A stretch of 64,000 nt of DNA, taken from Octopus sinensis (taxonomy: Eukaryota). The DNA lies in NCBI RefSeq assembly GCF_006345805.1, contig NC_043011.1, positions 23,820,464 to 23,884,463 on the forward strand. Direction: 5' to 3'. The notes beneath the pieces are model-generated. The model was not told where the DNA came from, did no database searches, and worked only from the letters and a program-made list of their open reading frames with translations. This document shows positions 741 through 54,498 of this stretch, piece by piece. The first letter of the stretch is position 1, and each line of letters starts with the position of its first letter. Both the position numbers and the translations under genes were made by a program.

Positions 741-901
741 GCACAAGAGTGGCTGTGTGGTAAGTAGCTTGCTAACCAACCACATGGTTCCGGGTTCAGT
801 CCCACTGCATGGCATCTTGGGCAAGTGTCTTCTGCTATAGCCCCGGGCCGACCAAAGCCTTGTGAGTGGATTTGGTAGACGGAAACTAAAAGAAGCCTGT
901 C

Positions 902-951
<50 letters not shown>

Positions 952-1121
952 GTTTGTGTGTCTTGGTGTGTTTACGTCCCCGTTACTTAGCAGTTCGGCA
1001 GAAGAGATCGATAGAATGAGTACTGGGCTTACAAAGAATAAGTCCCGGGGTCGATTTGTTCGACTAAAGGCGGTGCTCCAGCATGGCCGCAGTCAAATGA
1101 CTGAAACAAGTAAAAGAGAAA
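741..1121 (+). mobile_element. Bipartite tRNA-derived SINE family A (head, microsatellite, tail). Other copies: 4214-6300(-, split), 14070-14398(-), 14560-14830(+), 15292-15690(+), 24770-25162(+), 37315-37450(+), 39470-39665(+), 49010-49415(-), 52655-53075(+)
   Basis: Shared gtggctgtgtggtaag...ggttccgggttcagtccc (A/B-box-like), ccttgggcaagtgtcttct core and tail ...aaatgactgaaacaagtaaaaga. Confidence 0.85.
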
Positions 1122-4454: not shown

Positions 4455-6114
4455 CTCTTATTATAAAAGGCAGATTTTATCTGCCTCCCTTTGTAACTTA
4501 TAGAAATCTACAATATAGGATTTCTTCAATTACAATTTACCTAGCATTTTTAAGAGTAGAATGCATCGGGTCATGCCAGGTCTAGTTTTTAAAATTTAAA
4601 CTCCAATTAAGCAAAATTTACAGAAAACTCACATTCTGGTGTGTATGTCAAATGCTTTTCTTAATGTGGTTTACACCACACGTACACGCACACACAGTGT
4701 GCAACGAATAAAATGAAAGTAAATAGCGACAGTGATTTGAGGAAGACTAAACTGAAAGTATTTAAACCACTACTCAAAAAATAAAAAAACACAGCAAACA
4801 GAAACAAATAAATACATAACGATTTACTCCTCACACAATTTCTTCAATTAGAGTTTACCTAAGATTTTTCAAAGTACTCCATTCGGTCATGCAATAATAT
4901 ATTTCTTTCAATTTCACCCCCAATTAAGACAAAATCGAGAAAACTCAATATTTTAACATTTCACTCCGAAAGCATTGATGTATATGGGTGCGTGCGGTGA
5001 GTGTGTGTGTGTGTGTTTGATGGGTTGTGCGACACAGAAAGTGTGGTGTGTAAGTGAAGTGCTTTGTTAGTGTGTGTAAAGAGACAGACAGTGAAAAGAC
5101 AGAAATAACTGAACTTTTTTTATTCACTTTTTGTAGTGAGTGACTGAGAGAGAAAAGAGAGAGAGAGGTTATGTATGTATATATGTATGTATGGCTTCAG
5201 TGACACACACACACACAAAAACACATACCTACGTACACCTAAAGCACGCACGCACACACACACACACACACAAGCAGAGCGCGAACTTCATAATTTTGGT
5301 AGTATTAATTTGCGAGCGTACTTCTAAGCGCGCGTAATTGAAAGTTTTCACTATGATATCACCACGTGCGAAAAAATTCGAAGGGTTTTGAACAATTGAG
5401 ATACAGATGTCACGCCTGTATTGAAACCATTGCTAAGCTGCCGTAATTGCTTAATTAAGACTTTGTTTAAATTGAAAGGGGCAAATATGTGACGAGGTTG
5501 AAAAAAAATACCCCAGAAAAAAAAATGTACTGCTGGTATTTATATAATTCACTACTATTTTGCTACAATGTCATGAAAAAGAAAAAATTTAGGTATGTAA
5601 ATCGAATTCGCCACCCTCTTTTCCCCGTTCGCGTTTGTGTAAAAAAATTATTATTTAAGTTTTAAAAATTATTTACTTTGTTCAAAAAAATATTAATATT
5701 AATTAATTTTCAAGAATTATTTAATTTTATTCTGTAAAATAGTAATTAATTCATTTATCTGTAAATCCGCGAGGTTGTTACTCAGGCACCTAGAATGGTA
5801 ACCTTCAACTAACACTATCTCCTCCGAGACCCTGCGGCGCAAGTTGACCAAAATTGAGAGTATGGTAGAAGAAGGGTTGCTCTTCCTTCCGTAGAACATA
5901 AAATTCAAATCGGACCATGTTAACACCAAAAATTATTTACATCAAAAAGATGCTTTTTTCTATGAAAATCCCTATTTTTTACGATTTTTTCACTGCTGTG
6001 TTGCCACTTTTCGGTTATTTTCGACCAGAAAAATGTTCACAAAATTTTTACTTTTCAAAATTACAATTCCAGCGGGTCGAAACAAACCTGAGCAACGCCA
6101 GGCGATACTGCTAG
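4454..6114 (+). mobile_element. Non-autonomous Helitron nested in the microsatellite of a SINE
   Basis: Starts A|TCTCTTATTATAAAAGG and ends with GAGCAACGCCAGGCGATACTG-CTAG|T. It splits a minus-strand SINE (4214-4440 and 6135-6300). Confidence 0.8.
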
Positions 6115-6616
6115 TATGTATATATATACATATTTACGATGGGCTTCTTTCAGTTCCCGTCTACCAAATCTGCTCACAAGGCTTTGGTCGGCCCGAGGCT
6201 ATAACATAAGACACTTGCCCAAGGTGCCATGCAGTGGGACTGAACCCGGAACCATGTGGTTGGTAAGCAAGCTACTTACCACACAGCCACTCCTACGCCT
6301 AAGGGTATGCGTATGTGTTTTTTCGTGCAGGCTGTTCTGTCGATCAGATCAACTGGAACCCTTGTCATTGTAACTGAGGGAGTGCCAGTGTTTTTCTTTT
6401 GTTTTTTTTATATCGAGTGTGGAAACATGAGTGGATGACAAAGAGAGAAAAATGAATACAGATGTTAAAATGAGACTGCTACAAGAAAATGATCAGTCTG
6501 TGCCTTCATGTTAAACTTTCACGTTGAAAACAGTTTCTATATAAATTGTTCAGTGTTGAAATTTTCTGTTGCATTCTATGATATTGGAATTAATCTTTAG
6601 TCTTTAATTTTGACAG

Positions 6617-6725
6617 GATCCTGCACCACCACCACCGCCACCAAACCCGCGCCATAGACGTTCAAAGTCTTCTTCGGCTGCCGAAACGTGGCTGGAACAC
6701 AAGAGCCAAGACCATGAAGAACTTG
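6617..6725 (+). CDS. KIF23: KIF23/MKLP1 (kinesin-6) tail exon: DPAPPPPPPNPRHRRSKSSSAAETWLEHKSQDHEEL(G)
   Basis: Acceptor tttgacag and donor G|gtaatt, phase 0 in and 1 out. RHRRSKS..W.EHK matches the recalled KIF23 RHRRSRS...WVDHK (Aurora B/14-3-3 site). The upstream exon was not found in the window. Confidence 0.92.
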
Positions 6726-6924
6726 GTAATTGAATTATTAATCAACTTGCAGATCTACCCAGCATTGCCTGGGATTAAAATGGTATAGTTTGTGTGTGTG
6801 TGTGTGTATCTATCTATCTATCTATCTACATATATTTCCGGTCTTTCAATATGTGACCTCGTGAGTACCACTAGCGATTTTCTTTTCCTCTGTCCTCCCT
6901 TCTCGGGATCTTTCCTTCTCCTAT

Positions 6925-6959
6925 GTTTCTGACGAAGAGCTCCTCTCGAAACGTTAAAC
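6925..6959 (+). ncRNA. Minimal type I hammerhead ribozyme motif in the 5' pseudo-LTR
   Basis: GUUU-CUGACGA-A-GAG(cucct)CUC-GAAA-C-GUU-AAAC. Stem I is GUUU/AAAC, the core is canonical CUGANGA, stem II is 3 bp and stem III is palindromic ACGU. Confidence 0.7.
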
Positions 6960-7289
6960 CCTCCTTCTTCCCTTCTTCCCTGAGCATCCAATAATACTCT
7001 ATTTGTTCTACGTCCTTGCGGTGTTGTGTTTTTTTGTTTTTTTTTGTTTGGATTAACTTTATATATCGCATGCTCACATGGATACTGAGTGCCTTGGATA
7101 CCAATTCCTGGATTTTTACACCTACGGATTACTGTTACCATTCTTCCGGAGTACGCCACTGAAATCGTGATTGGAAATCAAAAAAACCTGTCCGTGACTC
7201 TACAATAACTTTTTTCCTCGAACTTTTTTTCTCGTACTTTTTCCTTCTTTACCTTTCTTCTTCTACCTCCATTTTTCCACTTGTGTCGC

Positions 7290-9965
7290 CACCACTTACA
7301 CCTACACAAACATCCACCACTTCTCAACATGCCTGACTTGCACTCGTTCGTCCAACACCTTCAATCCCTTCTTAGCCGCTTTCTCGCTTTTTTCCCCGCC
7401 CAATGCTTACAACCCGCAAAAAAACTTTCTCACTTACTTTTTAAAAAAACTCGCCACTCTAGCCATCTCTCCTTCCTCAGCCGTTGCCTCCGCCATCACG
7501 TCACGCTCCGTGGCTTCCTCTTGAAGTTCCACGCCACCCCCTATTTCTTCCCCCTCATCGAACCCACCCTCGCCCGCACTTCCTGCCTCCTCATCCGTGC
7601 TACCATCCGTTCCACCTGCTCTCTCTTTCACTCCCTTGACTACCAACTTCCCCAGGCTTACCTCCTTCTCTCCTCCCTCTGCCCTCCACTCTTCACCCAA
7701 CCTATTCTCCGCTTCATTCTTAATCTCAACCGCCAACTTCACAATTTCCTCACACACAAAAAACAAAAAACTCCACTACCTCCTCAACCCTTCACCTCCT
7801 TCCCCTCCCCCATCCCCTACATCCTCCCCTCCAGCTCCCCCAACTCCCTCTATTCCTGCACCCTCCCCCTTACCCCTCCACGGACCTACACACACCCCAC
7901 CCTGACCTTCCTACGCCTACCCCATCTTCACCCAACCACCCCAACCCTCCTCCCCACACCTCTGCACCCCTTCTTCTTGATCCCACTCATCCCACCCCCC
8001 CGCTTCCTCGCACTGTTGTCACTATACCCCCCAATTTCCCCCTCTCCGCTGCTGAGAGCTCTCTCTCTGTAAGGGACTCTGCTTCACGCCTCTCATGCAC
8101 CACTGACGAATTTGAGACTCGGACCGACATCAACCAGTTCCTGCGCCGCCTCAAACTTTGCGCATTCTTCCATGCGTCCCCGCAGCGTCATGACAATCAG
8201 GATTGGTTTTTGGAGCTGGGGTGGCGACCAGTTGGATGGGCGGCGCCAATTCAGTAGCCTAGATTTGTTCGTGAACGATTGCAACGCGTTGGTCAACCAG
8301 TTTAACTTTAAAAAAAAGATCTCTCCGAGACAACCTCACTCGGGCTGAATTGATTGCCCTTCGCCACCTCCGTCCCCGCAATGACATTGTCATCAAACCG
8401 GCGGACAAAGGTGGAGCAGTGGTGGTGTGGCGCGCAGATCTATACAAGGAGGAAGTGCTCAGCCAGCTTCAAAATCCCCTCTTCTATTGCCTCCTCCCCT
8501 CCGGTCCTACCTCTTCCTACCAACAGCGAGTGTCCTCCACCATCCACAACCTCATCTCCTCTTCTGCTCTCCCCCCCACCGCCACCAACCTCATCGTCCG
8601 CACAACCCACACCTCCACCATCTATTTCCTTCCCATCATAAACCCAATAACCCTGGCCGCCCCATCGTTTCCGCCTGTAATTGCCCCACTGAACACCTTT
8701 CCCTATACCTCGACCGCATCCTGTCCCCTTTAGTCGCAGCGCTCCCATCCCACATACATGACACCAACCACGCCCTCTGTCTCTTCAATTCCTTTTCCTT
8801 CCCTTCCAGTCCCTCATACCTCCTCTTCACCTTAGACATAAAATCCCTGTATACGGTAATTCCCCACAACGACGGTCTCTTAGCCCTCCAACACTTCCTC
8901 GACTGTCGTCCCAACCCCAGAACTATACGGTCGCTACATAGACGACTGCATAGGCGCCACCTCCCTTTCCCGTGAACAACTCTGCCACTTCATCTCTTTC
9001 CTCTCTAACTTCCACCCCTCTCTACAATTCACTTCCACCATCCCCAATACCTCTGTTAACTTCCTTGATATCTCTCTCAGCATCGACCACCCCTCCCACT
9101 CTCTCACCACCTCCACCTTCTTCAAACCCACGGATTCCCACCTCTATCTCAACTTCTCCTCCTCCCATCCCTTCCACACCAATCGGGCCATCCCCTACTC
9201 CCAGTTCCTCCGCCTCTGACGCTTGTGCAGCTGCGACCAGGATTTCGAGACCCAGTGTCAATACCTGGCCTGCCTGTTCAGGCATCGAGGATACCCACCT
9301 ACCCTGGTCTTGAACACCCTCGCCCGCACCACCACCCTTTCTCCTTCCTCTCACCCACCCCCAACTGCACCCCCTTTCTCCTCCTTTTCCACCCCTCTAC
9401 TCTACCCCTTCGTCGGAAGATACTACGTGCCTTCCGTCGTCTCCAGCTCGATCCCACGACCCGCCCCATTTTCCCCAACCCACCCTGTCCTTCAAACGAG
9501 CCCGGAATCTACGTGACCTCCTGGTCTGTAGCACCCTCTCTTCTTCCCCTTCAGCCCCACACGGATCCTTCCCGTGCTCCAGATCCCGCTGCAACACCTG
9601 TCCCTTCATCACCAACACCACTGCTGTCACCGGTTCCAACCAGCGTACTGTACGTATCAGGCATTCTTTTACGTGTACTTCGTCTGGTCTCATATACTGC
9701 ATTAAATGCAACCTCTGCGGAATGCTGTATGTAGGACAGACGGGACGCTGGTTGTCAGACCGATTCGCCGAACATCTAAGGGATGTTCGTCTACGGTCCA
9801 ATTCTCCCGTCGCACGTCACTTCCGCTCGGCCAGCCATTCCCCCGATGACATCTCTGTGTTTGGTCTCGCCCCACACAACAGTCCTCCACAATCCAGGCT
9901 TCAGTTGCAGCAACGTTTCATTTTCACTTTACAGACCAATACCCCACACGAACTCAACACAGCCC
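7290..9965 (+). pseudogene. Disrupted PLE ORF (RT plus GIY-YIG endonuclease)
   Basis: Motifs across frames: HLSFLSRCLRH, KGLCFTP, IVIKPADKGGAVVV, HKPNNPGRPIVS, LDIKSLYTVIPH, RYIDD, NFLDI, KPTDSHLYL, PYSQFLRL*RLCS, CSRSRCNTC, LIYCIKCNLCGMLYVGQTGR..RFAEH. It carries frameshifts, a stop and loss of RT motif 4. Confidence 0.92.
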
Positions 9966-10420
9966 CCTCCTACTGCGCTCCACCTCTCCCCACTAGCAAC
10001 TTTTTTTTTTGTTTTAAAATATTTTGTCCTTATACAGAAACACACACACATACTCACGTATCCATGAACACACCTACTTCCAACACACCACACACATACA
10101 ACCTACATGCACATGTACGCACACATACTTCCACACCTATACCCCCCCCACGCGCATGCACACATGCCCGTGCACAGGCACAAACAAACAATACTCATAC
10201 AGATACGCACACTCTTATAAACACCTAGCAGAGATACACACACGTAGGTGCACGCAAGCATGCGCATGTACATTACGCCCACACAACTCCAGTAAAACCC
10301 ACACACACACGCATACATTCACACACATAAATATGTACACACACATACATACATACATACATACATACGCACACATACATACACACATACACATACATAC
10401 GTACATACACACACACATAG

Positions 10421-10454
<34 letters not shown>

Positions 10455-11332
10455 ACATACATGCATACGGAGTTGGCTGTATTGCAGGCGTGCGTCAGTG
10501 TGTGTATGTGTGCCTGTGAATTCACATACACCCACACCAATTTTTTTCCATCAATCTTTCAATTATAAAGTGTGTGCTTGCATACATATATACACACACA
10601 TATAAACACATAAACACACATATAAACCTCTACATTTGTACACACACGCACATATATACATACATTCACTCGCACGCACATACACACACACGCACACACA
10701 TTTACATATATATATATACAATACACGCACACACATACACACGTACAAAGACACACAAATTCACATACACACCGACACATACATACACACAATATATACC
10801 TACACACGCACGCACACATACACATACGTACACACATAAGCACAGATACACACACACATACGCACACATACACTTAGTTAAGCACAGTTACTCGCCACAC
10901 ACCCAAACTCTATGCATACACACACATATACACTACAAACAAAACACACACGATACATATACATACACGCACACACACATACCTCTTTGTTTTTGACCTG
11001 TGACAAAAAACACCACTCCTTATTCTCACATACTGGCCAGCTACTAGCCAGTTGTTCGCCATAGACACACACGCACACACACACGTGTCATCATTGCACA
11101 CACACACACACGCGCACACGCAGACCTCCGTGCACGCACACATCCACACACATTCCCCCTCTCACTTTCCTTGTCTTTGCCATACTGTCTTTGAAAACTC
11201 TCCTGTCTTTAAAAAACATTATTCTTCCACCTTTCTACTTCCGGTCTTTCAGTATGTGACCTCGTGAGTACCATTGGCGTTTTTTTTTTTTTCTCCTCTG
11301 TCCTCCCTTCTCGGGATCTTTCCTTCTCCTAT

Positions 11333-11367
11333 GTTTCCGACGAAGAGCTCCGCTCGAAACGTTAAAC
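11333..11367 (+). ncRNA. Hammerhead motif in the 3' pseudo-LTR (CCGACGA core variant)
   Basis: GUUU-CCGACGA-A-GAGC(ucc)GCUC-GAAA-C-GUU-AAAC. Perfect stems I and II with a U4-to-C change. Confidence 0.6.
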
Positions 11368-11479
11368 CCTCCTTCTTCCCTTCTTTCCTGAGCGTCCAAT
11401 AATACTTTATTTGTTCCACGTCCTCGCGTTGTTGTGTTTTTTTTTTTTTTTGTGTTTTCTTGTTTGGATTAACTATATA

Positions 11480-11859
11480 CACTACCGTCAGAAATTAATT
11501 AGCACCCTTGATTTGCTCTTCACTCAAGGTATGTGCTGTCACCTAGTGGCCATATCTCGAACTATTGCTTTGTTGCGAGTTCACTGTTGCGCAGAACGAT
11601 GACGTAACTTTGTTTGCAGAGCAGTTTGAGAGTCTACAGCCTTATGATGTTGACATAGCAGTGCAACAACAACTTGGAGTGCGGATGCAGACAAATCTTC
11701 CTTTGTTTAATAGATATAGGTAGCGCCTCGCAAGGACCGAAATCACACCATACTAAGTTTTCTCATCGCGTAAGACGTTTTGAACAGCTCATAGGTTAAT
11801 TGATTTAACTTATTTAATGTAGAAATTTGAGAAGTGCTAATTAATTTCTGACGCAAGTG
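11480..11859. mobile_element. Tc1/mariner-type MITE
   Basis: About 26-bp TIRs (cactaccgtcagaaattaattagcac and gtgctaattaatttctgacgcaagtg) with TA flanks; it abuts the PLE 3' end. Confidence 0.8.
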
Positions 11860-11887
11860 TATATATATATATGTATATATATATATC

Positions 11888-12190
11888 TCATCATCATCAT
11901 CATCATTTAGCGTCCGCTTTCCATGCTAGCATGGGTTGGACGGTTCAACTGGGGTCTGTGAAGCCAGAAGGCTGCATCAGGCCCAGTCTGATCTGGCAGT
12001 GTTTCTACGGCTGGATGCCCTTCCTAACGCCAACCACTCCGTGAGTGTAGTGGGTGCTTTTTACGTGCCACCCGCACAGGTGCCAGACGGAGCCGGCAAA
12101 CGGCCACGGACGGATGATGCTTTTTACATGCCACCGGCACAGGGGCCAGGCGAGGCTGGCAACGGCCACGTACGGATGGTGGTGCAGACG
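11888..12190 (-). mobile_element. SINE family C with (GAT)n tail. Relatives at ~300-490(+), 1430-1630(-), 13420-13480(-) and 19190-19340(+)
   Basis: (cat)n-ttagcgtccgctttccatgctagcatgggttggac...ggctggatgcccttcctaacgccaac. Confidence 0.7.
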
Positions 12191-12229
12191 AGTTGGTGGT
12201 GCATATATATATACACACACACACACATA

Positions 12230-12970
12230 TATATTACAGTTGAAACAGGTGATATGGGAAAGTGCAGCATTGACAAAACATTTGTGGAGTAAATGATGGT
12301 CTAATTCGACTAAACAGTATCTAATGCGTCCGTTTGGAGGATTCCATGCCCTAACCTATCATGGAAAATTGGGAGTGGAGGAGTATGTAATTTTTGAACC
12401 CACTGAAAAGCTGTCATGTGGATATACTTGCCTTTGAGGCAGTCAGTGTGGTGTCTAATATGACCCATTGTATGGTTGACTGTCAAATGAATGGAGGTGT
12501 AATGGAGATATTGTACGTAAATGGGTATATTCTGGAAATGGGCTGCAATGGGGGACGGCAACGGGGAAGAGAACTGTTGAAATGTTGCAAAAGGTGAAGG
12601 GTTGACATTGGATTGCTGGTATGACTGTAGAATAAGAAACATAGAGTGAGGCTATACCATCACATGAGAATATGTAGTAATGAAATACTTGAAGAAATAC
12701 CGCATGGTATGTATTTTAGTATGTCTGTATTTTTTTATGCAGTGTAAATTAATAAAATATAAGCAAATGAACGAATTAGAAGCACATGTATGGAACTGCT
12801 AATTTAATGGTAAATGCCTCAATAATACAGAGATCAAGAATTATATATAGGATATATAATTATATAAGAATTATATATAGGGTAAATATGTAATTGTAAA
12901 TACCTTGCAACTGCTGTGATAATTATTAACTGGTAATGGAACAGTAAATATGTATTATAAATACCTTGGA
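12230..12970 (-). mobile_element. Second copy of the same Helitron-derived family with a different internal deletion
   Basis: 12230-12500 aligns by eye to 2030-2290 and 12700-12970 to 3090-3330. The middle has weak PIF1-like remnants. Confidence 0.6.
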
Positions 12971-13029
12971 CCTTGCCACCTCGTTTTTTTTTTTTCAAGT
13001 GTCACGTCTAGAACTCATACATTCAGGCA

Positions 13030-13960
13030 TGTCAGTTGACACATGTATATTTATGTGTGTGTTTAATAATGTACGTAACACAGAAACACACACACTCACA
13101 GACAGGTATACACTCATATACGAAATGTGACGTCGTCTTAGTTGTGGTATAGAATGTGACTGACATACGTGCATGTACTAAGATAGCAACACAGAGACAT
13201 ACATTTACATATGTCAGTCGTTACATATGTTTATGGGTGTGTGTGTGTGTTAATAACGTACCTAACACGGAAAGACACAAGCTGAGACACACACATACAT
13301 ACACTCACAGACAGATACAGCCATATACAAAATGTGACGTTGTGTTATAAAATGTCCTGTTGAGAATAGAAAGATTATCTCTATGAAATGTTATATTGTT
13401 TTAATTGAAATGAAAGTTTGACCGTCCAACCCATGCTAGCATGGAGAACAGACGTTAAACGATGATGATGATGATGATAGGCCAGCCCTCACATACATAT
13501 AGTAAGATAGATGCACAAACATACATTCATATATGTCAGTCTTCACATTTGTATGTGTATGTGTAGATGTGTGTGTGTTTAATAAAGTACCTAACGCGGA
13601 AAGACACACACACTCATACACTTAATACACTTACACAAATACTCTCACAAACAGATACAGTCATATACAAAATGTGATGCTGTTGTCGTTGAGATATAAA
13701 ATGTCCTGTTGACAATAGAAAGATTATCTCTATGAAATGTTATATTGTTTAAATGGAAATGAAAATAAAATTTCGTATTGACACTGACCAGCCCTCACAT
13801 ACATATAGTGTATTTAATAATAAACCTAACAGGGAAAGACACACTGATACATATACACTCTCATACAATCACACACATACACTCACAGATAGATGCAGTC
13901 ATACACAAAATGTGATGTCGTCGTAGTATAAAAAATGTCCTGTTGACAATAGAAAGATTG
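13030..13960. repeat. About 4 diverged tandem units of ~200-300 bp
   Basis: Recurrent cctaac.ggaaagacacac, caaaatgtga.g and aaaatgtcctgttga.aatagaaagatt at ~13345, 13695 and 13930. Confidence 0.65.
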
Positions 13961-14997
13961 CAGTGTGGAAGATGTTTGTAAGCCATTCAAGAACACACAA
14001 AAATTATTAGTTTCACTTCAACATTTAAATTCCATTTGTGTCAAAATATTTTCTTTGCTTTGAAACTGCAACCCCAGAACTTATTCTTTGTAAGCCTAGT
14101 ACTTATTCTATCAGTCTTATTTGCCGAACTGCTAAGTTACGGGGACGTAAACACATCAGCATTGGTTGTCAAGCGATGTTAGGGGGACAAACAAAGACAC
14201 ACAAATACACACACATATGTACATATACATATATACGATGGGCTTCTTTCAGTTTCCGTCTACCAAATCCACTCGCAAGGCTTTAGTCAGCCCGAGGCTA
14301 TAGTAGAAGACACTTGCCCAAGGTTCCACACAGTGGGACTGAACCTGGAACCATGTGATTGGTAAGCAAGCTACTTACCACACAGTTACTCCTACGCCTA
14401 TAATTGTGTAGAATTTTTCAGGTTGTCTCTGTGTTTTCAAGTTCTTCTCTAAAGAATAAGAGATTAAATGCAAGACACATTCTGTAACTTTGGATATTCA
14501 ATTAATAAAGATTCCTCTGTCAAAAATAGATTTAAATTTTGAATCGGTTTTTAGAGTTAGTAGCATGGCTGTGTGGTTAAGAAGCTTGCTTCCCAACTAT
14601 GTGATCTTAGGATCATGCCACCTTGGACAAGTGTCTTCCATTATAGCCTTGGACCAAACAAAACTTAGTGAGTGGATTTGGTAGATGGAAACTGGAAGAA
14701 GCCTGTTGTATGTGTGTGTGTATATATATATATGTATATATCTGTATCTTTGTGTTTGTTCTCCTCCACTGCTTTATGACGTATGTTAGTTTATATCCCT
14801 GTAACTTAGTAAGTTCAGCAAAAGGCATCGAAAGAATACCAGACTCAAAAAAACAAAAACAAAAAAAAAACAAACTACTGCGGTTGATTTGTTTAACTGA
14901 ATCCTTCAAGTTGGTGTTGCAGGATGGCTGCAGTCCAAGGACTTTTAAACAAATAAATGATAAAAGAAATTGTTTCACAATTTTCTGTCCACACTCT

Positions 14998-15218
14998 TTT
15001 AGCTCTTAAACATTTAAACCGACCATATCTGGCCAAAATATACCACTTGTTTTTTGTAAAAACAGGCCAGATCCAGCCTCTTACACCAACCCTACAATGT
15101 TAGTCTAAAAATAAGCAATCACTTCTCTGGAATTTTGAAGCTGTGAAATAATGCATAATTAATTCAAAACGATGTGAATAAATAAGCATTTGACAGTAAT
15201 CTGAATGCCAAGGGATTA
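14998..15218. mobile_element. Degenerate MITE, possibly piggyBac-like (TTAA end)
   Basis: tttagctcttaaacatttaaacc...ctgaatgccaagggattaa gives weak terminal inverted similarity. Confidence 0.35.
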
Positions 15219-15434
15219 AGTCTCATTTGCTTCCTCTTAATTCCATTTTTTTCCCCTGAGGAATATGAACTTCCACATTAGTTGTCTTTACAGGCACCGG
15301 CACAGCTGTGTGGTATGGAACTTGCTTCCTGACCACATGGTTCCAGGTTCAGTCCCACTGCATGGCACCTTGTGCAAGTGCGTTCTACTATATCCTTGGT
15401 AGACAGAAACTGAAAGAAACCAGTCGTGTGTGTT

Positions 15435-15475
<41 letters not shown>

Positions 15476-15859
15476 ACATACACACACATTTGTGTTTGTG
15501 TCTCTGTCCTAACCCCCATCGTTTGACAACTGATGTTGGTGTGTTTATGTCCCTGTAACTTATCAGTTCAGCAAAAGAGACCTATCGAATAAGCACTAGG
15601 CTTACAAAGAATAAGTCCTGGGGTCGATTTCTTTGACGAAAGGTGGTGCTCCAGTATGGTCGCAGTCATATGACTGCGACAAGTAAAAGAATAAGTTTAT
15701 CTCTGTTGTTAGTTTGTTGAATGAAGACAAGTGTTTTTAAAGTGGGGAGTATTACTATTTTTGAGAAACTGTTGTAGTATGTCTTTTGTTGACATAATGA
15801 AGTCCTTAGGTGAAAAAAAAAAAAGTCAAAATAATTGTTCTTTGTTGTACTCATTGTAG

Positions 15860-15999
15860 GTACCCTCTTTCAACCAAAGCTGAAGAAAAAACGATCGGTG
15901 ACTAAATTGACTGAGAAGGACACTAAAGAGGTATCCAAGTATTGCCTTAACCATCAAGAGTTGGGATCAGATGGAGAAATGCGTACTAAATTATATAAG
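15860..15999 (+). CDS. KIF23: KIF23 exon: GTLFQPKLKKKRSVTKLTEKDTKEVSKYCLNHQELGSDGEMRTKLYK
   Basis: Boundaries cattgtag| and AAG|gtgaca. Phase 1 in matches the previous exon. KY.L.HQEL.SDGE..TKL.K is the MKLP1 Arf6-binding tail motif. Confidence 0.93.
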
Positions 16000-24767: not shown

Positions 24768-25164
24768 CATAGCGTAGGAGTGGCTGTGTGGTAAGTAGCT
24801 TGCTAACCAACCACATGGTTCTGGGTTCAGTCCCACTGCGTGGCATCTTGGGCAAGTGTCTTCTGCTATAGCCCCGGGCCGACCAAAGCCTTGTGAGTGG
24901 ATTTGGTAGATGGAAACTGAAAGAAGCCTGTTGTATATATGTATATATATGTGTGTGTTTGTGTGTCTGTGTTTGTCCCCCTGGCATTGCTTGACAACCG
25001 ATGCTGCTGTGTTTACGTCCCCGTCACTTAGCGGTTCAGCAAAAGAGACCGATAGAATAAGTACTGGGCTTACAAAAGAACAAGTCCCGGGGTCGAGTTG
25101 CTCGATTAAAGGTAGTGCTCCAGCATGGCCGCAGTCAAATGACTGAAACAAGTAAAAGAGTACA

Positions 25165-25520: not shown

Positions 25521-26089
25521 TATATTGGTAAAAACGGTAAGATAACAAAAGAAAGAGACCTCAATATTATGTAAATAGAGGAAATTTATCTATTATATAT
25601 ATGTGTGTGTGTGTATGCATGTGTGTGTGTATGCATATGTATGTGTATACGTGTGTATGCATATGTCTGTGTGTTGCATATGTATGTGTATGCACATGTA
25701 TGTGTATACGTGTGTGTATGCATATGTATGTGTATACGTGTGTATGCATATGTATGTGTATACATGTGTATGCATATATATGTGTATGCATATATATGTG
25801 TGTATTTGTGTATGCATATGTATGTGTGTATTTGTGTATATATATGTATTTGTGTATGCATATGTATGTGTGTATATACATATATATATATATGTGTATA
25901 TATATTTATATATGTGTGTGTATATATGTGTATGAATTTCAGCCGACGTCGACTTTGGCTTTCATCCTTTCGGGGTCTATGAAATAAGTACCACTTACAC
26001 ACCGAGGTTGATGTAATCGAGTGGACCCCTTCCCCCACCCCCACCAAAGTTTCAGGCCTGTGCCTATAGTAGAAAAGACTATTGGGAGT

Positions 26090-27900
26090 AACTACATCAA
26101 GGGATGGAAGGTACAATTTCCTGTAACTCAGCAGACCAAATTGAAAAGGCGTTGCGTCGGAGGATGGCGAGTGAGATGTGCCGGAATAGCTACTCTGACT
26201 GACGGGCTTACGCTTGCAGATAGCCATCTTTGCCCCAATTGGTAGGAGGGGGGACATGGTTCGCGGGGAGCCAAGAATGCTAGAGGTCACCCCTAGATAG
26301 CCATCTTTGCCCCAATTGGTAGGAGGAGGGACATGGTTCGGGGGAGCCAAGAATGCTAGAGGTCACCCCTAGATAGCCATCTTTGCCCCAATTGGTAGGA
26401 GGAGGGACATGGTTCGGGGGAGCCAAGAATGCTAGAGGTCACCCCTAGATAGCCATCTTTGCCCCAATTGGTAGGAGGAGGACATGGTTCGGGGGAGCCA
26501 AGAAGCTAGAGGTCACCCCTAGATAGCCATCTTGCCCCAATTGGTAGGAGGAGGGACATGGTTCGGGGGAGCCAAGAATGCTAGAGGTCACCCTAGATAG
26601 CCATCTTTGCCCCAATTGGTAGGAGGAGGGACATGGTTCGGGGGAGCCAAGAATGCTAGAGGTCACCCCTAGATAGCCATCTTTGCCCCAATTGGTAGGA
26701 GGAGGGACAGGTTCGGGGGAGCCAAGAATGCTAGAGGTCACCCCTAGATAGCCCTCTTTGACCCCAATTGGTAGGAGGAGGGACATGGTTCGGGGGAGTG
26801 CAAGAATGCTAGAGGTCACCCCTAGATAGCCATTTTCCCCCAGTTGGTAGGAGGAGGGACATGGTTCGGGGGAGCCAAGAATGCTAAGGGTCACCCCTAG
26901 ATAGCCATCCATCTTTTGCCCCAATTGGTAGGAGGAGGGACATGGTTCGGGGGAGGTCAAGAATGCTAGAGGTCACCCCTAGATAGCCATCTTGGCCCCC
27001 ATTGGTAGGAGGAGGGACATGGTTCGGGGGAAGTTCAAGAATGCTAGAGGTCACCCTAGATAGCCATTTTTGCCCCAATTGGTAGGAGGAGGGACATGGT
27101 TCGGGGGAGTCAAAATGCTAGAGGTCACCCCTAGATAGCCATCTTTGCCCCAATTGGTAGGAGGAGGGACATGGTTCGGGGGAGCCAAGAATGCTAGAGG
27201 TCACCCCTAGATAGCCATCTTTGCCCCAATTGGTAGGAGGAGGGACATGGTTCGGGGGAGTCAAGAATGCTAGAGGTCACCCCTAGATAGCCATCTTTGC
27301 CCCAATTGGTAGGAGGAGGGACATGGTTCGGGGGAGCCAAGAATGCTAGAGGTCACCCCTAGATAGCCATCTTTGCCCCAATTGGTAGGAGGAGGGACAT
27401 GGTTCGGGGGAGCCAAGAATGCTAGAGGTCACCCCTAGATAGCCATCTTTGCCCCAATTGGTAGGAGGAGGGACATGGTTCGGGGGAGCCAAGAATGCTA
27501 GAGGTCACCCCTAGATAGCCATCTTTGCCCCAATTGGTAGGAGGAGGGACATGGTTCGGGGGGGAGCCAAGAATGCTAGAGGTCACCCCTAGATAGCCAT
27601 CTTTGCCCCAATTGGTAGGAGGAGGGACATGGTTCGGGGGGAGCAAGAATGCTAGAGGTCACCCCTAGATAGCCATCTTTGCCCTAATTGGTAGGAGGAG
27701 GGACATGGTTCGGGGGGGAGCCAAGAATGCTAGAGGTCACCCCATGTCACAGGCTTGGCCCTAAACCTGCCAGCTACCGGTAATTTGTCAGTTTGCTTTT
27801 TTCAGCCTGATGAGCGGCAGAGGTCTGGGTTGGTGACCCAGCACACCAAGTTGCCGTGGAATGGGAAAGTTGGCTTACCGTCATGACTTTGTGTTCCTTT
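26090..27900 (-). mobile_element. C-terminal RLE endonuclease relic of a CRE-like LINE, interrupted by a minisatellite
   Basis: Minus strand reads SAAHQAEKSKLTNYR*LA (AE..K..KY motif) before the array and LFRHISLAILRRNA (like QRISIAIQRGNA) after it. Confidence 0.55.
26218..27745. repeat. 76-bp GC-rich minisatellite, about 20 copies
   Basis: Unit tagatagccatctttgccccaattggtaggaggagggacatggttcgggggagccaagaatgctagaggtcacccc; period 26294 to 26370. Confidence 0.97.
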
Positions 27901-28169: not shown

Positions 28170-28740
28170 TTCTGTCAAAAGTAATTCTCATAACTACCTT
28201 CACAACCATGACCCAAGTAGATTCTGCCCCCACCAAGCCGCAGAAAGGAAGACCACCCAAAATCACGCCGGCAGTGAGAAAAGCACAACAGAGCGCAGGA
28301 GTGGCTGGACCATATCCACTCGGGACCCTGAGAACAACAATCAGGTGAAAAAAAAAAATGTTTGTGCATGCTATGGGAGCTAGCGTAAGAACCACATAGT
28401 GAAGTTTGACAGGAAACTTTACATGCAGATTCAAGGTGCAGCCATTAGTGTTGGTGTGACTGGAGATGAAGTCAATCTCTTCATGACCTGGTGAAATAGA
28501 AAACTTAATTCCTAGCTGTATTGCTTTACTGTAGGTATGTAGATGACATTAATATTGTAGTTAGGACAAACCCTAATAAATGTCTAGAAACCGAGAGGTG
28601 CATAATGGAGAGCATCCAGCATGTAGCTAACTCCATCCACCAAAGTTTCAAGGTAACTATAGATTACCCCACTAGGCACCCTAATAATAGACTCCCTGTC
28701 TTTGATACTAAAGGTTAGAGACTGTAAATAACAGAGTGCA
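28170..28740 (+). pseudogene. PLE RT fragment of a second family
   Basis: KGRPPKIT, GKLYMQIQGAAISVGVTG, YCRYVDDINI and VTIDYP..HPNNRLPVFD. Confidence 0.7.
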
Positions 28741-28774
28741 ACTCCTCTACTCCTGTTACAGGGAGCTAAACCAG

Positions 28775-31134
28775 CATATATCGTGTCACACGGGAGGTGA
28801 GGCGACAGACGTTTGTGGCGAGACGTTATGTGCGTGGAGACAGTCGACCGAGGCAGCGACGATTGTCGACTTGAAATCGACATACTTGCAGCTCCATGTG
28901 AGCGACAAACTGTGGCGATATCAGCTGTGCGGTACAAAGGCCGGACGTACTGTTTAACCAGGCTGGGTTTCGGGCTGAATTCCGCTCCGAAGATCATGGC
29001 GGCAGTGCTTAAGTCCGTCCTAGGGAAAGACGGCAAGATTAGAAAGGCCACCAGCTCCTACATTGACGACATTTTGGTGGACGAAACTGTAGTGCCAGTC
29101 AACGAGGTAGTTAGACATCTGGAGAAGTTCGGACTGATTGCGAAGCCACCGAAGTCGATGGAAGGGGGAGCCGAGCTGGGGCTGAAGCTGCGAAGAGATA
29201 GATCGGTTGAACTGGTGTTCCGGAGAGGGAATGAAATCCCAGAGCTGAGTTCCAGCGTCAGCAGGAGAGAGCTGCTCTCAGTGTGTGGGATGTTGGTCGG
29301 TCACTACCCGATCGCTGGATGGCTGCGCACGGCGTGTAGTTACACCAAGAGACGAGCAGAGGGGGAGAGTTGGGGCGACAAGGTGGGAGAAGGGACGGTG
29401 GTGATGATGCAGGAAATCCTAGAGAGGACGAGAGCGGAAGACCCGGTCAGGGGGGACTGGTACGTGCCCAAGACGGAATGCGGGACCGTCTGGTGTGATG
29501 CTAGCAGTATAGCGATAGGGGTTGTGTTGGCAATCGAAGGTGCTGCGGTGGAGGACGCGGCCTGGCTTCGGAAAGCAGATGTTTTCAACCACATCAATGT
29601 CACCGAATTAGACGCGGTGCTGAAAGGGGTAAACTTGGCCCAGAAATGGGGGCTGCGCACAATTGAAATCCGGACGGATTCGGCCACTGTGCTTGGCTGG
29701 GTAGGATCGGTGATCACCGGTGAAAGGAGAGTGCGGACGAAAGGTGCAGCGGAGATGTTAGTGAAGCGCCGTCTAGGAGTTCTAGGTGAATTGATCGCCG
29801 AGTTCGGACTGAAGCTGAATGTGGTTTTCGTGCCTTCGGAGAAAAACAGGGCGGACGCACTGACCAGGGTGAAAAGAGCGTGGTTGGAAGAACCGGAGGA
29901 GGCCCGGAAAGGGATAGCTGCGGCGTGTCGGTTGGATGACTCCGAACTGAAGAGACTGCATGCTATGCATCACCTGGGTGTGGACAGGACCCTGTATCTG
30001 GCGAAGAAAATTGATGCTGACGTCACTAGGAGAAGCGTCCGGAAGCTGCGACAGATGTCAGTCCATCGACCCTACTCCGTGTGGGCATGAACAGGGAAGC
30101 CTTTCGGTGGAGCAGAACTGGAAAAGGCTAGCTGTGGATGTGACACACTACCGTCAGGGAATGTAGCTATCCATGGTCGACTGCGGGCCAGGCCGGCTGG
30201 CCATTTGGAGGGAGTTGAGAACGGGCATTGCTGACGAGATCGCGCAGATCCTGAACGGGATATTTTTAGAGAGAGGTCCCGTGGAAGAACTACTGATGGA
30301 CAACGGGGCGGCGTTTCGTTCGGAAGCATTGAGGGTTATGCTTGATCGGTGGAATGTGCGTCGCTTGTTCAGAGCAGCGTATAGGCCGAGCGGTAACGGG
30401 ATCGTGGAGAGGCACCATCGGACAGTCAAGGCCATAGCGGAAAGAGGGCACATTTCGCCGCTTGAAGCAGTTTTTTGGTACAACTTGTCTCCCCGATCCG
30501 GACAAGCTGAGGAATCTGTGCCGCAGTGAGCTGTGTTCAAATATGAATGGAGGCACCCGAGCAAAGCGCCGGAGGGTCACGAGGAAGAGAAGGGACCCGT
30601 TCGCGTGAAAATAGGAAGTCTGGGTTAAGCCACCAAAGGCGCGCTGTACGTCTCAATGGAGCAGAGGAAACAACGTATCCGTGGATGAAATGCCGCGACA
30701 CGTCTTGGACCTTCGCAGGATTGTCGCTTCGACGGACAACGATTCTGGAGAGGGAGAGAACGAGGTGCCCAGCTTGAGAAGACCTCGACGCGCAAGACGC
30801 CCTCCCAGTTGGATGGTGGACTACGACATGGAGTGGAGAGATTGTGATCTTTAAGATCAGGGTGGCGTGTGGGATGACGTTAGCAGTTGGGTGCGTTGAC
30901 CGGACGTTGGGGCAACCGGAAGACGTGCGCAGGGAGCGGGGATTTCGGCCTTTCCAACGAGGGTCGTCGAGGTGTTAAGACGTGTGAAGACGTTGCTAAG
31001 GCTGGATGAAGCAGCTGCTATCTTTAGCGTTCGGGTCGGGGTTGTGACGAAGGATCCGTTACCACTGAAGGGTCTCTATCAGAGCGAAGAGAAGGTAGGT
31101 GCCTTTATATATCGACTATCTCGCACACACTACA
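28775..31134 (+). mobile_element. 5'-truncated Gypsy-like LTR retrotransposon (RT, RNase H, integrase, putative 3' LTR 30868-31134)
   Basis: YCLTRLGFGLNSAPKIM, SYIDDILV, WCDASS...HINVTELDAV, HHLG..RT, C..CQSID, MDNGAAF and GNGIVERHHR. A purine-rich tract precedes TGT...ACA; no 5' LTR is visible. Confidence 0.88.
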
Positions 31135-34200: not shown

Positions 34201-35660
34201 TATAAGCACAGACACACAATACATACATACACCTATACACCACACACATATACACACACACATACTTACATACATTCATACGGACACACAGACACACAGA
34301 CATACACCCATACACACTCACACATACACACACATACACACATACATACATACACACTCACACACATACACACACATACATACATACACCTATACACACA
34401 CACATATACACACACACATACTTACATACATTCATACGGACACACAGACACACCAGACATACACCCAACACACTCACACATACACACACACACACACACA
34501 TTACTTACCACCACCGCTCGCATGCACGCGCACACCATGCATGCACCACCGCCTGGGGTTCTGGCTAAATCTCGGGTTCGTGTCTGGGGCCGGCGTGTTC
34601 TTGGGTTTCTCTTACGCCTGTCACCGCGGGAGTATTTTCCCATCATTCCGTCAGTTGCAAATTGTTTCCTTGCATGCATATATACACACACACATAAACA
34701 TATAAACACACATATAATACCCCTACTTTTTGTACACACACGCACACACATACATACATTCACTCCCACGCACTCACACACACACATTTACATATATATA
34801 TATATATATATACAATACACGCACACACACTTACACTCGTACAAACACACACAAATTCACATGCACACCGGCACATACACACACCCAACATATACCTCCA
34901 CGCGCACGCACACATACACATACGTACACACATATAAGCACAGACACACACATACATACGCACACCTAAACATGCGCACACACGCGCACGCACACATACA
35001 TACATGCACACAAGTATACATATAAGCACACACACACGCCTACACATACACTCTGTTAAGCAAAGTTACTCGCCATACACACAAAAAAAACGCACACGTA
35101 CACACACATACTACAACAAAACACACACACGGGACGTACACACGCACGCACACATTCCCCTTCTTCCTCCTTTTGCTACTGACCTGTGACTGCTACGTCC
35201 ACTAGCCTTCGCCCAACATACACACACATACACACAGACGCACGCACTAATAAACACACACTCTGTCATCCCGCACACCGCCACTACCGCTGCTTGCCAC
35301 TAGCCGTCGCCTAACATATACATACATACACACACACGCACACACTCACATACACACACTCTTCATCTCACTCATTGTGTTTTTACCTTCCTTCTTTTTC
35401 CGCTCTCCTGTCTTTCAAAACCTGTCCCCTCTCGTCTACGACTTCCGCTTCTCAGTATGTTTACCTCGTGAAGACCACTCGCGTTTTTTTCCCTCTGTCC
35501 TCCCACCTCGGGATCTTTCTTTCTCTTATGTTTCCGACGAAGAGCTCCGCTCGAAACGTCATACCCTCCTTCTTCCCTTTTTTCCTGAGCGTCTAATAAT
35601 ACTTTAATTGTTCCACCTTTTGCGTTGTTGTCTTTTTTGTTTTCTTGTTTGGATTAACTT
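31240..35660 (+). repeat. CA-rich higher-order repeat plus the 3' region and pseudo-LTR of the 6833-11479 PLE family
   Basis: Landmarks recur every ~620-670 bp. 34680-35200 is homologous to 10600-11000. A duplicated unique block lies at 33820-33950 and 34555-34680; pseudo-LTR at 35440-35660. Confidence 0.8.
35530..35564 (+). ncRNA. Hammerhead motif in a third pseudo-LTR copy (CCGACGA core, GUC triplet)
   Basis: GUUU-CCGACGA-A-GAGC(ucc)GCUC-GAAA-C-GUC-AUAC. Stem I has one U-U mismatch. Confidence 0.55.
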
Positions 35661-35669
35661 TATATATAT

Positions 35670-54277: not shown

Positions 54278-54340
54278 AGATAACCGAAGAGATGGTGTTG
54301 TGGATTTCCACTTCGGCATCTGAAACTCAGAGTTTTATCT
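54278..54340 (+). ncRNA. Hammerhead-like motif of a second family
   Basis: AGAUAA-CCGAAGA-GAUG...GUGG(auuu)CCAC...CAUC-U-GAAA-CUC-A-GAG-UU-UUAUCU. Stem I is 6 bp and stem III is self-complementary. Non-canonical at C4 and the extra U. Confidence 0.45.
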
Positions 54341-54443
54341 TGACTATTGAGTAATTGTAACATATTATTTTATAGATAAATTTCCTCTATATATTGAGGT
54401 CTCTTTCTTTCTTCTGTTATCTTACTGTTTTTACCAATATATA

Positions 54444-54498
<55 letters not shown>

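What the first reader, a model, noticed from the sequence alone, without database searches (positions are those of the whole stretch)
6925..11367. Sense-strand hammerhead pair in PLE pseudo-LTRs inside a KIF23 intron
Seen: both pseudo-LTRs carry stem I GUUU/AAAC, a core, stem II and GAAA-C-GUU, with stem III reduced to the palindrome ACGU. Known: PLE pseudo-LTRs carry minimal type I hammerheads that can work as dimers by swapping stem III. Inference: KIF23 pre-mRNA contains both motifs in sense, so the 5' copy (canonical CUGACGA) could cleave the 3' copy in a cytokinesis gene's intron, or they have decayed in complementary ways (weak stem II in one, U4C in the other).
Basis: partly seen in the sequence, partly recalled or inferred. 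Interest (0 to 1): 0.7.

Follow-up and report, generated by a model that had tools for sequence, protein, structure and literature searches.

The report
Relic hammerhead motifs in dead Penelope retroelement
The two small hammerhead-ribozyme motifs are real, but they are the standard motifs that every Penelope-like retrotransposon carries in its flanking repeats; here they sit in a dead copy inside a KIF23 intron and most likely do nothing for the gene.

Summary
Observation confirmed. Minimal type I hammerhead (min-HHR) motifs lie at 6925-6959 and 11333-11367 (+), one in each pseudo-LTR (6836-7066, 11239-11481; 92.6% identical) of a 4.6-kb Penelope-like element (PLE). The PLE lies in sense in the 9.1-kb intron (6728-15859) between two exons encoding the Arf6-binding domain of a KIF23-like kinesin.

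The motif has the published hallmarks of PLE min-HHRs. A descriptor expects 0.01 such hits per shuffled window. A covariance model built only from related PLEs picks out these copies plus a third at 35530-35564. Stems I and II covary across relatives. Rfam's hammerhead models miss them.

Interpretation partly supported. The dimer topology is right: the 5' copy's core would cut at 11363. Cleavage is unlikely, because the ORF is dead, the double-hammerhead fold is about -2.5 kcal/mol against -24 for a competing duplex, and the copies are 4.4 kb apart.

"Complementary decay" is wrong in polarity. With the third copy as outgroup, both differences arose in the 5' copy. C4 (CCGACGA) was probably present at insertion, and the canonical U4 is a CpG-to-TpG change.

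A separate C4 subfamily has also amplified in metagenome contigs of an unidentified host. Ordinary finding; low interest.

The parts
6617..6727 (+). KIF23-like exon (start of the Arf6-binding domain, ...RHRRSKSSSAAETWLEHKSQDHEEL), followed by a GT donor at 6728
   Evidence: Pfam PF16540 MKLP1_Arf_bdg, profile positions 2-29, E 2.9e-4. Joined to the next exon it matches PDB 3VHX_B KIF23 at E 2.1e-11.
6728..15859 (+). Intron (gtaattg...cattgtag) that contains the whole PLE
   Evidence: The Pfam profile and the PDB alignment run contiguously across the two exons. Splice sites were read.
6836..7066 (+). 5' pseudo-LTR (3' end of an upstream partial tandem unit)
   Evidence: Direct repeat of 11239-11481, 92.6% identical over ungapped columns.
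6925..6959 (+). 5' min-HHR: canonical CUGACGA core, bulged A, stem II reduced to 3 bp, ACGU palindrome, predicted cut 6955|6956
7329..9975 (+). Decayed PLE ORF (N-terminal domain, RT, CX4CX2C linker, GIY-YIG endonuclease)
   Evidence: tblastn with a 735-aa relative (L007:7628-9835:-, Pfam RVT_1/HTH_animal) gives six pieces in frames 2,1,3,1,3,2. Residues 321-374 of the relative (RT core) are missing. In-frame stops are visible.
10000..11160 (+). CA-rich microsatellite-filled 3' UTR of the element
11239..11481 (+). 3' pseudo-LTR
11333..11367 (+). 3' min-HHR: CCGACGA (C at position 4), intact 4-bp stem II GAGC/GCUC, predicted cut 11363|11364
15860..15999 (+). Next KIF23-like exon (GTLFQPKLKKK...KYCLNHQELGSDGEMRTKLYK)
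   Evidence: PF16540 profile positions 28-80, E 3.8e-13. 3VHX_B alignment. Boundaries read.
34368..35667 (+). 5'-truncated second copy of the same PLE family (3' UTR plus pLTR-equivalent), ending in a (TA)n tract
   Evidence: blastn against 10297-11479. 84-87% identical to the two pLTRs.
35530..35564 (+). Third min-HHR copy: GUUU CCGACGA A GAGC-UCC-GCUC GAAACGU C AUAC (C4, H17 = C, stem I broken)

Best explanation
A canonical endonuclease-bearing Penelope-like retrotransposon inserted, in sense orientation, into an intron of a KIF23-like gene of a cephalopod-like genome. It inserted as the usual partial tandem, which produced two pseudo-LTRs.

Like canonical PLEs, it carries one minimal type I hammerhead motif per pseudo-LTR. 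The motif has no stem III, only the palindrome ACGU, so any catalysis would need two copies to pair as a double hammerhead.

The copy is now dead. Its ORF is frameshifted and has lost the RT core.

Its lineage most likely already carried C instead of U at core position 4 when it inserted. The 3' pLTR and an independent copy at 35.5 kb keep that state. The 5' copy later gained a canonical U4 through a CpG-to-TpG transition and lost one stem II pair.

The motifs are relics of the transposon's own RNA biology, whose function is itself still unclear. They most likely have no effect on KIF23 pre-mRNA.

Shown: the anatomy, family membership, orientation, ORF decay and covariation. Inferred: the ancestral C4 state, the lack of cleavage and the lack of effect on the host gene.
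For: - Motif and repeats.
- PLE identity and decay: (E 8e-80 to a 735-aa RT plus GIY-YIG relative; six frame pieces; 54-aa RT gap). The closest named protein is an Octopus bimaculoides GIY-YIG protein.
- Host gene and sense orientation.
- Same architecture in related PLE loci, 30-290 nt downstream of the GIY-YIG-encoding gene: short stem I, CUGAYGA, bulged A, G10.1-C11.1, GAAACGU, H17.
- Covariation: 78% of cells paired against 63% when shuffled. Covariation score 0.44 against 0.16, reached by 0 of 500 shuffles. All slid controls score 0.12 or less. The three inner stem I pairs all show compensatory double changes. G10.1-C11.1 is invariant in 17 of 17 sequences.
- The custom model finds exactly the three window copies.
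- Polarity: the two pLTRs are each other's closest relatives (17 differences, against 30 and 35 to copy 3). Both hammerhead differences are derived in the 5' copy: 6930 C>T in TCCGA, and 6944 G>T.
- C4 is heritable elsewhere. Among 127 unique metagenome instances of the same hammerhead type, position 4 is U in 80 and C in 45. Other free positions are at most 20% non-consensus. The state agrees in 13 of 15 two-copy loci. C4 is in near-complete linkage with downstream flank variants, Fisher p about 1e-15.
- Energetics.
- Literature: the published min-HHR hallmarks and their low in vitro activity (PMC4209133). The Anolis PLE hammerhead cleaves only with its protein, is not needed for insertion in vitro, and leaves no RNA-seq ends at the cut site (PMC11167929). 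HHR function in PLEs is still unclear (PMC8557442). Mutations in the CUGA U-turn give low activity (PMC9901934).
Against: - No RNA data are available for this locus, so residual cleavage cannot be excluded.
- The 5' copy does have a canonical core, and it would face the intact substrate strand of the 3' copy.
- PLE protein could be supplied in trans by live copies elsewhere in the genome.
- The effect of C4 has never been measured in a PLE min-HHR.
- The ancestral-state inference rests on a single outgroup copy.
- Nearest-neighbour energies ignore tertiary contacts and proteins.
Confidence: 0.85

Rival explanations
1. The two copies still act as a one-sided double hammerhead in KIF23 pre-mRNA. 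The 5' copy's canonical core pairs through ACGU and a swapped stem I with the 3' copy and cuts the intron at 11363|11364. This would modulate KIF23 mRNA output or release an intronic RNA.
For: The topology is correct, and both strands needed for that one active site are canonical: the 5' core is CUGACGA...GAAA and the 3' substrate strand is ACGU-U|AAAC. Both motifs lie on the pre-mRNA sense strand. Conserved intronic hammerheads exist in amniote genes (PMC6155905).
Against: - The active fold is worth only about -2.5 kcal/mol, against -24 for a competing duplex. The 5' monomer prefers a GUUUC/GAAAC hairpin (-5.0) over the hammerhead fold (-0.6).
- Stem II of the catalytic copy has only 3 bp with a 5-nt loop.
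- The partners are 4.4 kb apart.
- Perfect min-HHR dimers cleave weakly and mostly at unphysiological Mg2+ (PMC4209133).
- A PLE hammerhead needed its own protein to cleave (PMC11167929), and this ORF is dead.
- The canonical U4 is a recent CpG decay product, not a conserved state.
Confidence: 0.05
2. The motif is kept in PLE pseudo-LTRs for a non-catalytic reason, such as a protein-binding, packaging or promoter-associated element. The hammerhead resemblance is then functionally secondary, which is why C4 lineages amplify freely.
For: - C4 subfamilies amplify.
- PLE clades without hammerheads proliferate well, and hammerheads may simply parasitise PLEs (PMC8557442).
Against: - Stems I and II covary as an RNA structure.
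- The core boxes, the bulge, G10.1-C11.1 and the palindrome are exactly the catalytic architecture.
- Fungal and plant PLE hammerheads cleave efficiently (PMC4209133).
- This rival concerns the PLE family in general. It does not change the verdict for this dead copy.
Confidence: 0.08
3. Chance resemblance: a CT-rich repeat that happens to contain CUGANGA and GAAA.
For: The Rfam hammerhead models do not score it.
Against: - Expected 0.01 hits per shuffled window.
- The same architecture recurs at the same place in related PLEs from other assemblies and in more than 120 metagenome loci.
- There is covariation, and the custom model hits the copies.
Confidence: 0.01

Closest known systems
Minimal hammerhead ribozymes of Penelope-like elements (Cervera & de la Pena 2014, PMC4209133; Lunse, Weinberg & Breaker, RNA Biol 14:1499, cited in PMC6765202)
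   Same: One motif in each pseudo-LTR, on the strand of the ORF. Type I topology. No helix III beyond a palindrome at 15.2-16.2. An unpaired nucleotide between A9 and G10.1. A G10.1-C11.1 pair. A short helix I (4 bp). Expected to work only as a dimer.
   Different: Helix II is short (3-4 bp, against 7-8 bp in the Schistosoma families). Two of the three copies have C at core position 4. The element is a dead copy. The host appears to be a cephalopod.
Poseidon PLE hammerhead of Anolis carolinensis (PAc; PMC11167929)
   Same: A PLE-borne hammerhead at the pLTR, in tandem or partial-tandem units.
   Different: PAc is a live element whose hammerhead overlaps the ORF start and cleaves only with PAc protein. 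Here the motif is about 1.36 kb downstream of the ORF, 118 nt from the unit's 3' end, and no protein can be made from this copy.
Double hammerheads of newt satellite 2 and avocado sunblotch viroid (Forster et al. 1988, as summarised in PMC6155905)
   Same: An unstable helix III is rescued by pairing two copies. Each core then cleaves the other copy's site.
   Different: Those copies are adjacent tandem repeats a few hundred nucleotides apart, with both cores intact. Here they are 4.4 kb apart and at most one active site is canonical.
Conserved intronic hammerheads of amniotes (RECK, CTCL, DTNB; PMC6155905)
   Same: A type I hammerhead in sense in an intron of a protein-coding gene, probably derived from retroelements.
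   Different: Those are canonical, stable motifs with tertiary loop contacts, conserved across orthologues and recognised by Rfam. This one is a min-HHR inside a recognisable decaying transposon, is not scored by Rfam, and has no evidence of conservation.

Membership tests
PLE min-HHR (Cervera & de la Pena 2014) | Located in both pseudo-LTRs of a PLE, on the ORF strand | tested here: met
   Direct repeats at 6836-7066 and 11239-11481 each hold one motif on the + strand. The ORF remnants are on the + strand.
PLE min-HHR (Cervera & de la Pena 2014) | Conserved core boxes CUGANGA and GAAA | tested here: inconclusive
   The 5' copy has CUGACGA and GAAA. The 3' copy and the copy at 35.5 kb have CCGACGA, with C at position 4. 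So the feature is met in one copy of three.
PLE min-HHR (Cervera & de la Pena 2014) | [quoted passage not shown] | tested here: met
   An extra A at 6936, 11344 and 35541. The same bulge is present in all relatives.
PLE min-HHR (Cervera & de la Pena 2014) | G10.1-C11.1 closing pair of helix II | tested here: met
   Present in all three copies. Invariant in 17 of 17 distinct sequences.
PLE min-HHR (Cervera & de la Pena 2014) | No helix III; palindromic 15.2-16.2 that allows a dimer | tested here: met
   A15.1-C-G-U16.1 = ACGU in all copies.
PLE min-HHR (Cervera & de la Pena 2014) | Short helix I (4-5 bp) and H17 other than G | tested here: met
   GUUU/AAAC with U17 in both pLTR copies. The copy at 35.5 kb has C17 but a broken helix I.
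PLE min-HHR (Cervera & de la Pena 2014) | Families with covariation and compensatory changes in the helices | tested here: met
   Covariation score 0.44 against 0.16 when shuffled (0 of 500 shuffles reach it). Five pairs have double changes. Slid controls score 0.12 or less. The sequences come from several PLE families, not from the window's own family.
PLE min-HHR (Cervera & de la Pena 2014) | Self-cleavage as a dimer | not testable with these tools
   Only thermodynamics could be computed: the double-hammerhead fold is -2.5 kcal/mol against an MFE of -24.
Rfam hammerhead families (Hammerhead_1, _3, _II, HH9, HH10) | Score at or above the family's gathering threshold | tested here: not met
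   No hit at gathering score over the window. No hammerhead hit at E<=10 on 301-nt slices around either motif.
Canonical EN+ Penelope-like element | Single ORF with an RT followed by a C-terminal GIY-YIG endonuclease, flanked by pseudo-LTRs | tested here: met
   tblastn to a 735-aa RT plus GIY-YIG relative covers residues 6-734 in order. The GIY-YIG segment matches 300 relatives. A CX4CX2C linker (CSRSRCNTC) was read directly; by the description in PMC8557442 this suggests the Neptune or Nematis clades, which is an inference.
Canonical EN+ Penelope-like element | Intact coding capacity (a live copy) | tested here: not met
   At least five frame changes, in-frame stops and a 54-aa gap in the RT core. 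Pfam finds no RVT or GIY-YIG domain in the fragments.
KIF23 / MKLP1 | C-terminal Arf6-interacting domain (PF16540) | tested here: met
   Two + strand exons match profile positions 2-29 and 28-80. Joined, they match PDB 3VHX_B, 'Kinesin-like protein KIF23', at E 2.1e-11. The motor domain was not sought in the window.
Domesticated intronic hammerhead (amniote type) | Conservation at the orthologous intron across species, independent of the transposon | not testable with these tools
   No genome of the source species or its relatives was reachable. Exact-pattern scans of metagenome and viral contigs found no copy of this family.

The most novel reading that the evidence does not exclude
PLE lineages whose hammerhead core reads CCGANGA (C at position 4) are transposition-competent and not rare. 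The window's family made at least two insertions carrying C4. In contigs from an unidentified host, a sequence-distinct C4 subfamily has amplified alongside a U4 subfamily. If so, either hammerhead catalysis is dispensable for PLE propagation, or the protein-assisted dimeric min-HHR tolerates a change that cripples ordinary hammerheads.
Probability: 0.45. Interest if true: 0.45.

Novelty: new member of a known kind. Interest (0 to 1): 0.17.

Why it matters
For KIF23 it probably does not matter. The locus is a decaying transposon in an intron, with a textbook PLE feature.

It is useful as a worked example in two ways. First, Rfam's hammerhead models do not detect PLE min-HHRs, whereas a small custom model does. 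Second, a 'canonical' core in one copy can be a product of CpG decay rather than a conserved state.

The one point of wider interest is the side observation that C4 core variants are inherited and amplified in PLE lineages. This bears on the open question of whether hammerhead catalysis is needed for PLE retrotransposition at all (PMC8557442, PMC11167929).

Tried and rejected
- Rfam at gathering score and at E<=10 found no hammerhead, only chance hits to leuA-Halobacteria, CRISPR-DR52 and Zeta-pan at 14-22 bits.
- Pfam on the PLE ORF fragments found nothing. Identity had to come from tblastn with a relative.
- A possible extra exon at about 11619-11720 (EQFESLQPYDVD...) was considered and dropped. 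The PF16540 profile and the 3VHX_B alignment run straight from the 6617-6727 exon into the 15860-15999 exon.
- An exact-pattern scan for more copies of the window's own family (GTTTCNGACGAAGAGCTCCNCTCGAAACGT) found none in metagenome contigs or viral contigs. The family consensus at position 4 therefore could not be obtained.
- L002 and L010, which hold more distant PLE relatives, gave no hammerhead by descriptor or model. L009 holds a copy with stem II deleted.
- The Lunse et al. paper and the supplements of Cervera & de la Pena are not held, so I could not check whether C4 variants are already described.
- A regex search for the last Arf6-domain exon (GGGQSVQF-like) found nothing convincing. 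Whether the copy at 35.5 kb is still inside KIF23 is undetermined.
- The third protein-database search was not spent on naming the species.
Full report
OBSERVATION.
- At 6925-6959 (+) it reads GUUU-CUGACGA-A-GAGC UCC UCUC-GAAA-CG-U-U|AAAC.
- At 11333-11367 (+) it reads the same except for C instead of U at core position 4 (11338) and G instead of U at 11352. That G completes a 4-bp stem II (GAGC/GCUC).
- In hammerhead numbering this gives: stem I of four pairs (2.1-2.4 with 1.1-1.4), C3-A9, one unpaired A, G10.1...C11.1, G12 A13 A14, then A15.1 C15.2 G16.2 U16.1 with no loop, then U17.
- The predicted cuts are 6955|6956 and 11363|11364.

A descriptor I wrote requires stem I of at least 4 bp, CUGANGA, an optional bulge, stem II of at least 3 bp, GAAA, a palindrome, U16.1 and H17. 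It finds only these two sites on both strands of the 64-kb window. In 300 dinucleotide-preserving shuffles the mean is 0.01 exact-core hits per window. Rfam 15 reports no hammerhead, either at gathering score or at E<=10 on 301-nt slices. That is expected for a motif without helix III.

THE ELEMENT. The motifs lie in two direct repeats, 6836-7066 and 11239-11481, which are 92.6% identical.

Between the repeats lies a CT-rich ORF remnant and a CA-microsatellite-filled 3' UTR. A 735-aa relative from another assembly (L007:7628-9835:-) has Pfam RVT_1 and HTH_animal hits on record and ends in a GIY-YIG motif. It aligns to 8012-9973 in order, but in six pieces in frames 2,1,3,1,3,2. Residues 321-374 of the relative, the RT core, are missing. 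In-frame stops are also present.

The GIY-YIG segment finds 300 relatives. The closest named one is an Octopus bimaculoides protein at 62% identity.

This is therefore a dead canonical (RT then GIY-YIG) Penelope-like element with pseudo-LTRs. The linker CSRSRCNTC fits the CX2-5CxxC motif that PMC8557442 ascribes to the Neptune and Nematis clades; the clade assignment is an inference.

HOST GENE. The + strand exon 6617-6727 matches Pfam MKLP1_Arf_bdg positions 2-29. The + strand exon 15860-15999 matches positions 28-80. Joined, they align without a gap to PDB 3VHX chain B, 'Kinesin-like protein KIF23', at E 2.1e-11.

The intron is 6728-15859 (gt...ag), and the PLE lies wholly inside it in sense.

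FAMILY MEMBERSHIP. Cervera and de la Pena (PMC4209133) list four traits of PLE min-HHRs that were not in their search descriptor:
- families with covariation;
- a conserved G10.1-C11.1 pair;
- palindromic 15.2-16.2.

All four are present here.

I fetched DNA around relatives of the GIY-YIG segment. The same architecture lies 30-290 nt downstream of the GIY-YIG-encoding gene, and often also as an inverted partner upstream. Examples are UCU-CUGACGA-A-GAGC GAAU GCUC-GAAACGU-U-AGA, GCU-...-C-AGC, UACUC-CUGAAGA-A-GGCCG AGA CGGCC-GAAACGU-C-GAGUA and CAA-CUGAUGA-U-GGAUGA...UCAUCC-GAAACAUGU-C-UUG.

Counts on 13 such sequences, and on 17 distinct sequences once the window copies are added:
- 76-78% of cells are paired, against 61-63% when shuffled.
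- The covariation score is 0.50 and 0.44, against 0.18 and 0.16 when shuffled. None of 500 shuffles reaches the observed value.
- All slid controls score 0.17 or less.
- The three inner stem I pairs each show compensatory double changes.
- G10.1-C11.1 never varies.

A covariance model built only from the relatives ranks the two pLTR motifs first and second in the window. It ranks a third copy at 35533-35561 third. The next hit has E 0.72.

A THIRD COPY AND THE POLARITY OF THE DIFFERENCES. The third copy belongs to a 5'-truncated insertion of the same family at 34368-35667. It also reads CCGACGA with an intact GAGC/GCUC stem.

The two pLTRs differ from each other at 17 sites, and from copy 3 at 35 and 30 sites. 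They are therefore sisters, and copy 3 is an outgroup. Polarised this way, 10 changes fall on the 5' pLTR and 5 on the 3' pLTR. Both hammerhead differences are derived in the 5' copy:
- 6930 C>T, in the CpG context TCCGA>TCTGA;
- 6944 G>T.

The element therefore most likely inserted with C4 in both pLTRs. The 'canonical' core of the 5' copy is a later CpG-to-TpG change, and the same copy lost a stem II pair. This rests on one outgroup copy and needs a genome-wide census.

C4 ELSEWHERE. A metagenome scan with GACGAAGRGCN{3,4}GCTCGAAACGT leaves positions 3, 4 and 17 and stem I free. It returned at least 120 loci.

Among 127 unique instances, position 4 is U in 80 and C in 45. The other free positions are at most 20% non-consensus, and the ordinary U-to-C change at 2.1 is seen in 5 of 127. 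The state agrees in 13 of 15 loci that hold two copies. It is also almost completely linked to downstream flank variants, with Fisher p about 1e-15.

C4 thus marks a subfamily that has amplified. This makes a C4 master for the window's family plausible. It also fits reports that hammerhead catalysis is not needed for PLE insertion in vitro (PMC11167929) and that hammerhead-less PLEs proliferate (PMC8557442). Deep mutagenesis of a canonical hammerhead shows low activity for changes in the CUGA turn (PMC9901934). The effect of C4 in a min-HHR is untested.

HOW IT WOULD WORK, AND WHY IT PROBABLY DOES NOT. In a stem-III-swapped double hammerhead the substrate strand (16.x-H17-1.x) of one copy sits in the core of the other. 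The structure written out shows this.
- The 5' copy's CUGACGA/GAAA core would face U17 of the 3' copy, giving a cut at 11363|11364.
- The C4 core of the 3' copy would face the 5' site.

Several points argue against cleavage:
- The fold evaluates to about -2.5 kcal/mol for the isolated 35-mers, against -24 for a competing extended duplex.
- The 5' monomer prefers a GUUUC/GAAAC hairpin (-5.0) over the hammerhead fold (-0.6).
- The catalytic copy has the weakened stem II.
- The partners are 4.4 kb apart in a 9.1-kb intron.
- Perfect min-HHR dimers cleave poorly in vitro (PMC4209133).
- The one PLE hammerhead studied with its protein needs that protein (PMC11167929), which this copy cannot make.

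From general knowledge, not tested here: slow ribozyme cuts inside introns are usually tolerated by co-transcriptional splicing. I put the chance of a measurable effect on KIF23 at about 5%.

COMPARISON AND VERDICT. The finding is a new instance of a known kind, the PLE min-HHR, in a dead element in an intron. It is not a member of the Rfam hammerhead families by their thresholds. Nothing indicates a domesticated intronic ribozyme of the amniote type. Interest is low. The only lead worth following is the heritable C4 core variant.

Noticed in passing
window 34368-35667 (hammerhead at 35530-35564, + strand): A third, unreported copy of the same PLE family. It is 5'-truncated and ends in a (TA)n tract. 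Its min-HHR also has C at core position 4, H17 = C and a broken stem I. I did not determine whether it is still inside the KIF23-like gene.
   Followed up: partly
loci L013-L132 (metagenome contigs Ga0126336/37/43, OMLO01..., and others): More than 120 loci hold the same PLE hammerhead type. 35% of 127 unique copies have C at core position 4. The state agrees within two-copy loci (13 of 15) and is tightly linked to flank variants (p about 1e-15). So a C4 subfamily has amplified beside a U4 subfamily. The host of these contigs was not identified.
   Followed up: partly
window 6925-6959 and 11333-11367: GUUUC (stem I 5' strand plus C3) is complementary to GAAAC (G12-C15.2), and GAGCUC in stem II is itself a palindrome. 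Alternative hairpins and extended duplexes therefore outcompete the hammerhead fold in nearest-neighbour energies.
   Followed up: partly
window 58800-63800 (+ strand): Three near-identical tandemly spaced Tc1/mariner-type transposase remnants, with Pfam HTH_Tnp_Tc3_2 and DDE_3 hits. They start at about 58816, 61111 and 62930 and are separated by (CATA/TGTA)-type microsatellite blocks.
   Followed up: partly
window 28500-31000 (+ strand): An LTR-retrotransposon pol remnant, with DUF7047, an RNase H-like RVT_3 hit and a weak integrase core hit. It is preceded by a roughly 700-bp-period repeat around 26000-27800, seen as repeated ORF peptides.
   Followed up: no
window 53680-55110: Two tandem units of about 1018 bp with nearly identical ORF remnants: 53678-53872 and 54696-54890, then 53824-54087 and 54757-55101.
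   Followed up: no
window 841-987 (+), 6064-6198 (-), 14647-14780 (+), 24872-24991 (+): Several copies of a short interspersed repeat that translates as ...PRADQSLVSGFGRR/WKLKEA... It is probably an abundant SINE of the host genome and occurs on both strands, including inside the KIF23 intron.
   Followed up: no
window 11474-11505 vs 11834-11865: The last bases of the 3' pLTR plus 24 nt of flank recur as a 32-nt inverted repeat (94% identical) about 330 nt downstream. It may be a trace of the inverted partial copies or 'tails' described for PLE insertions.
   Followed up: no
locus L009 11024-11059: A related PLE hammerhead whose stem II is deleted (GCU CUGACGAAGG UCGAAACGUC AGC). This shows another way these motifs decay.
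   Followed up: no
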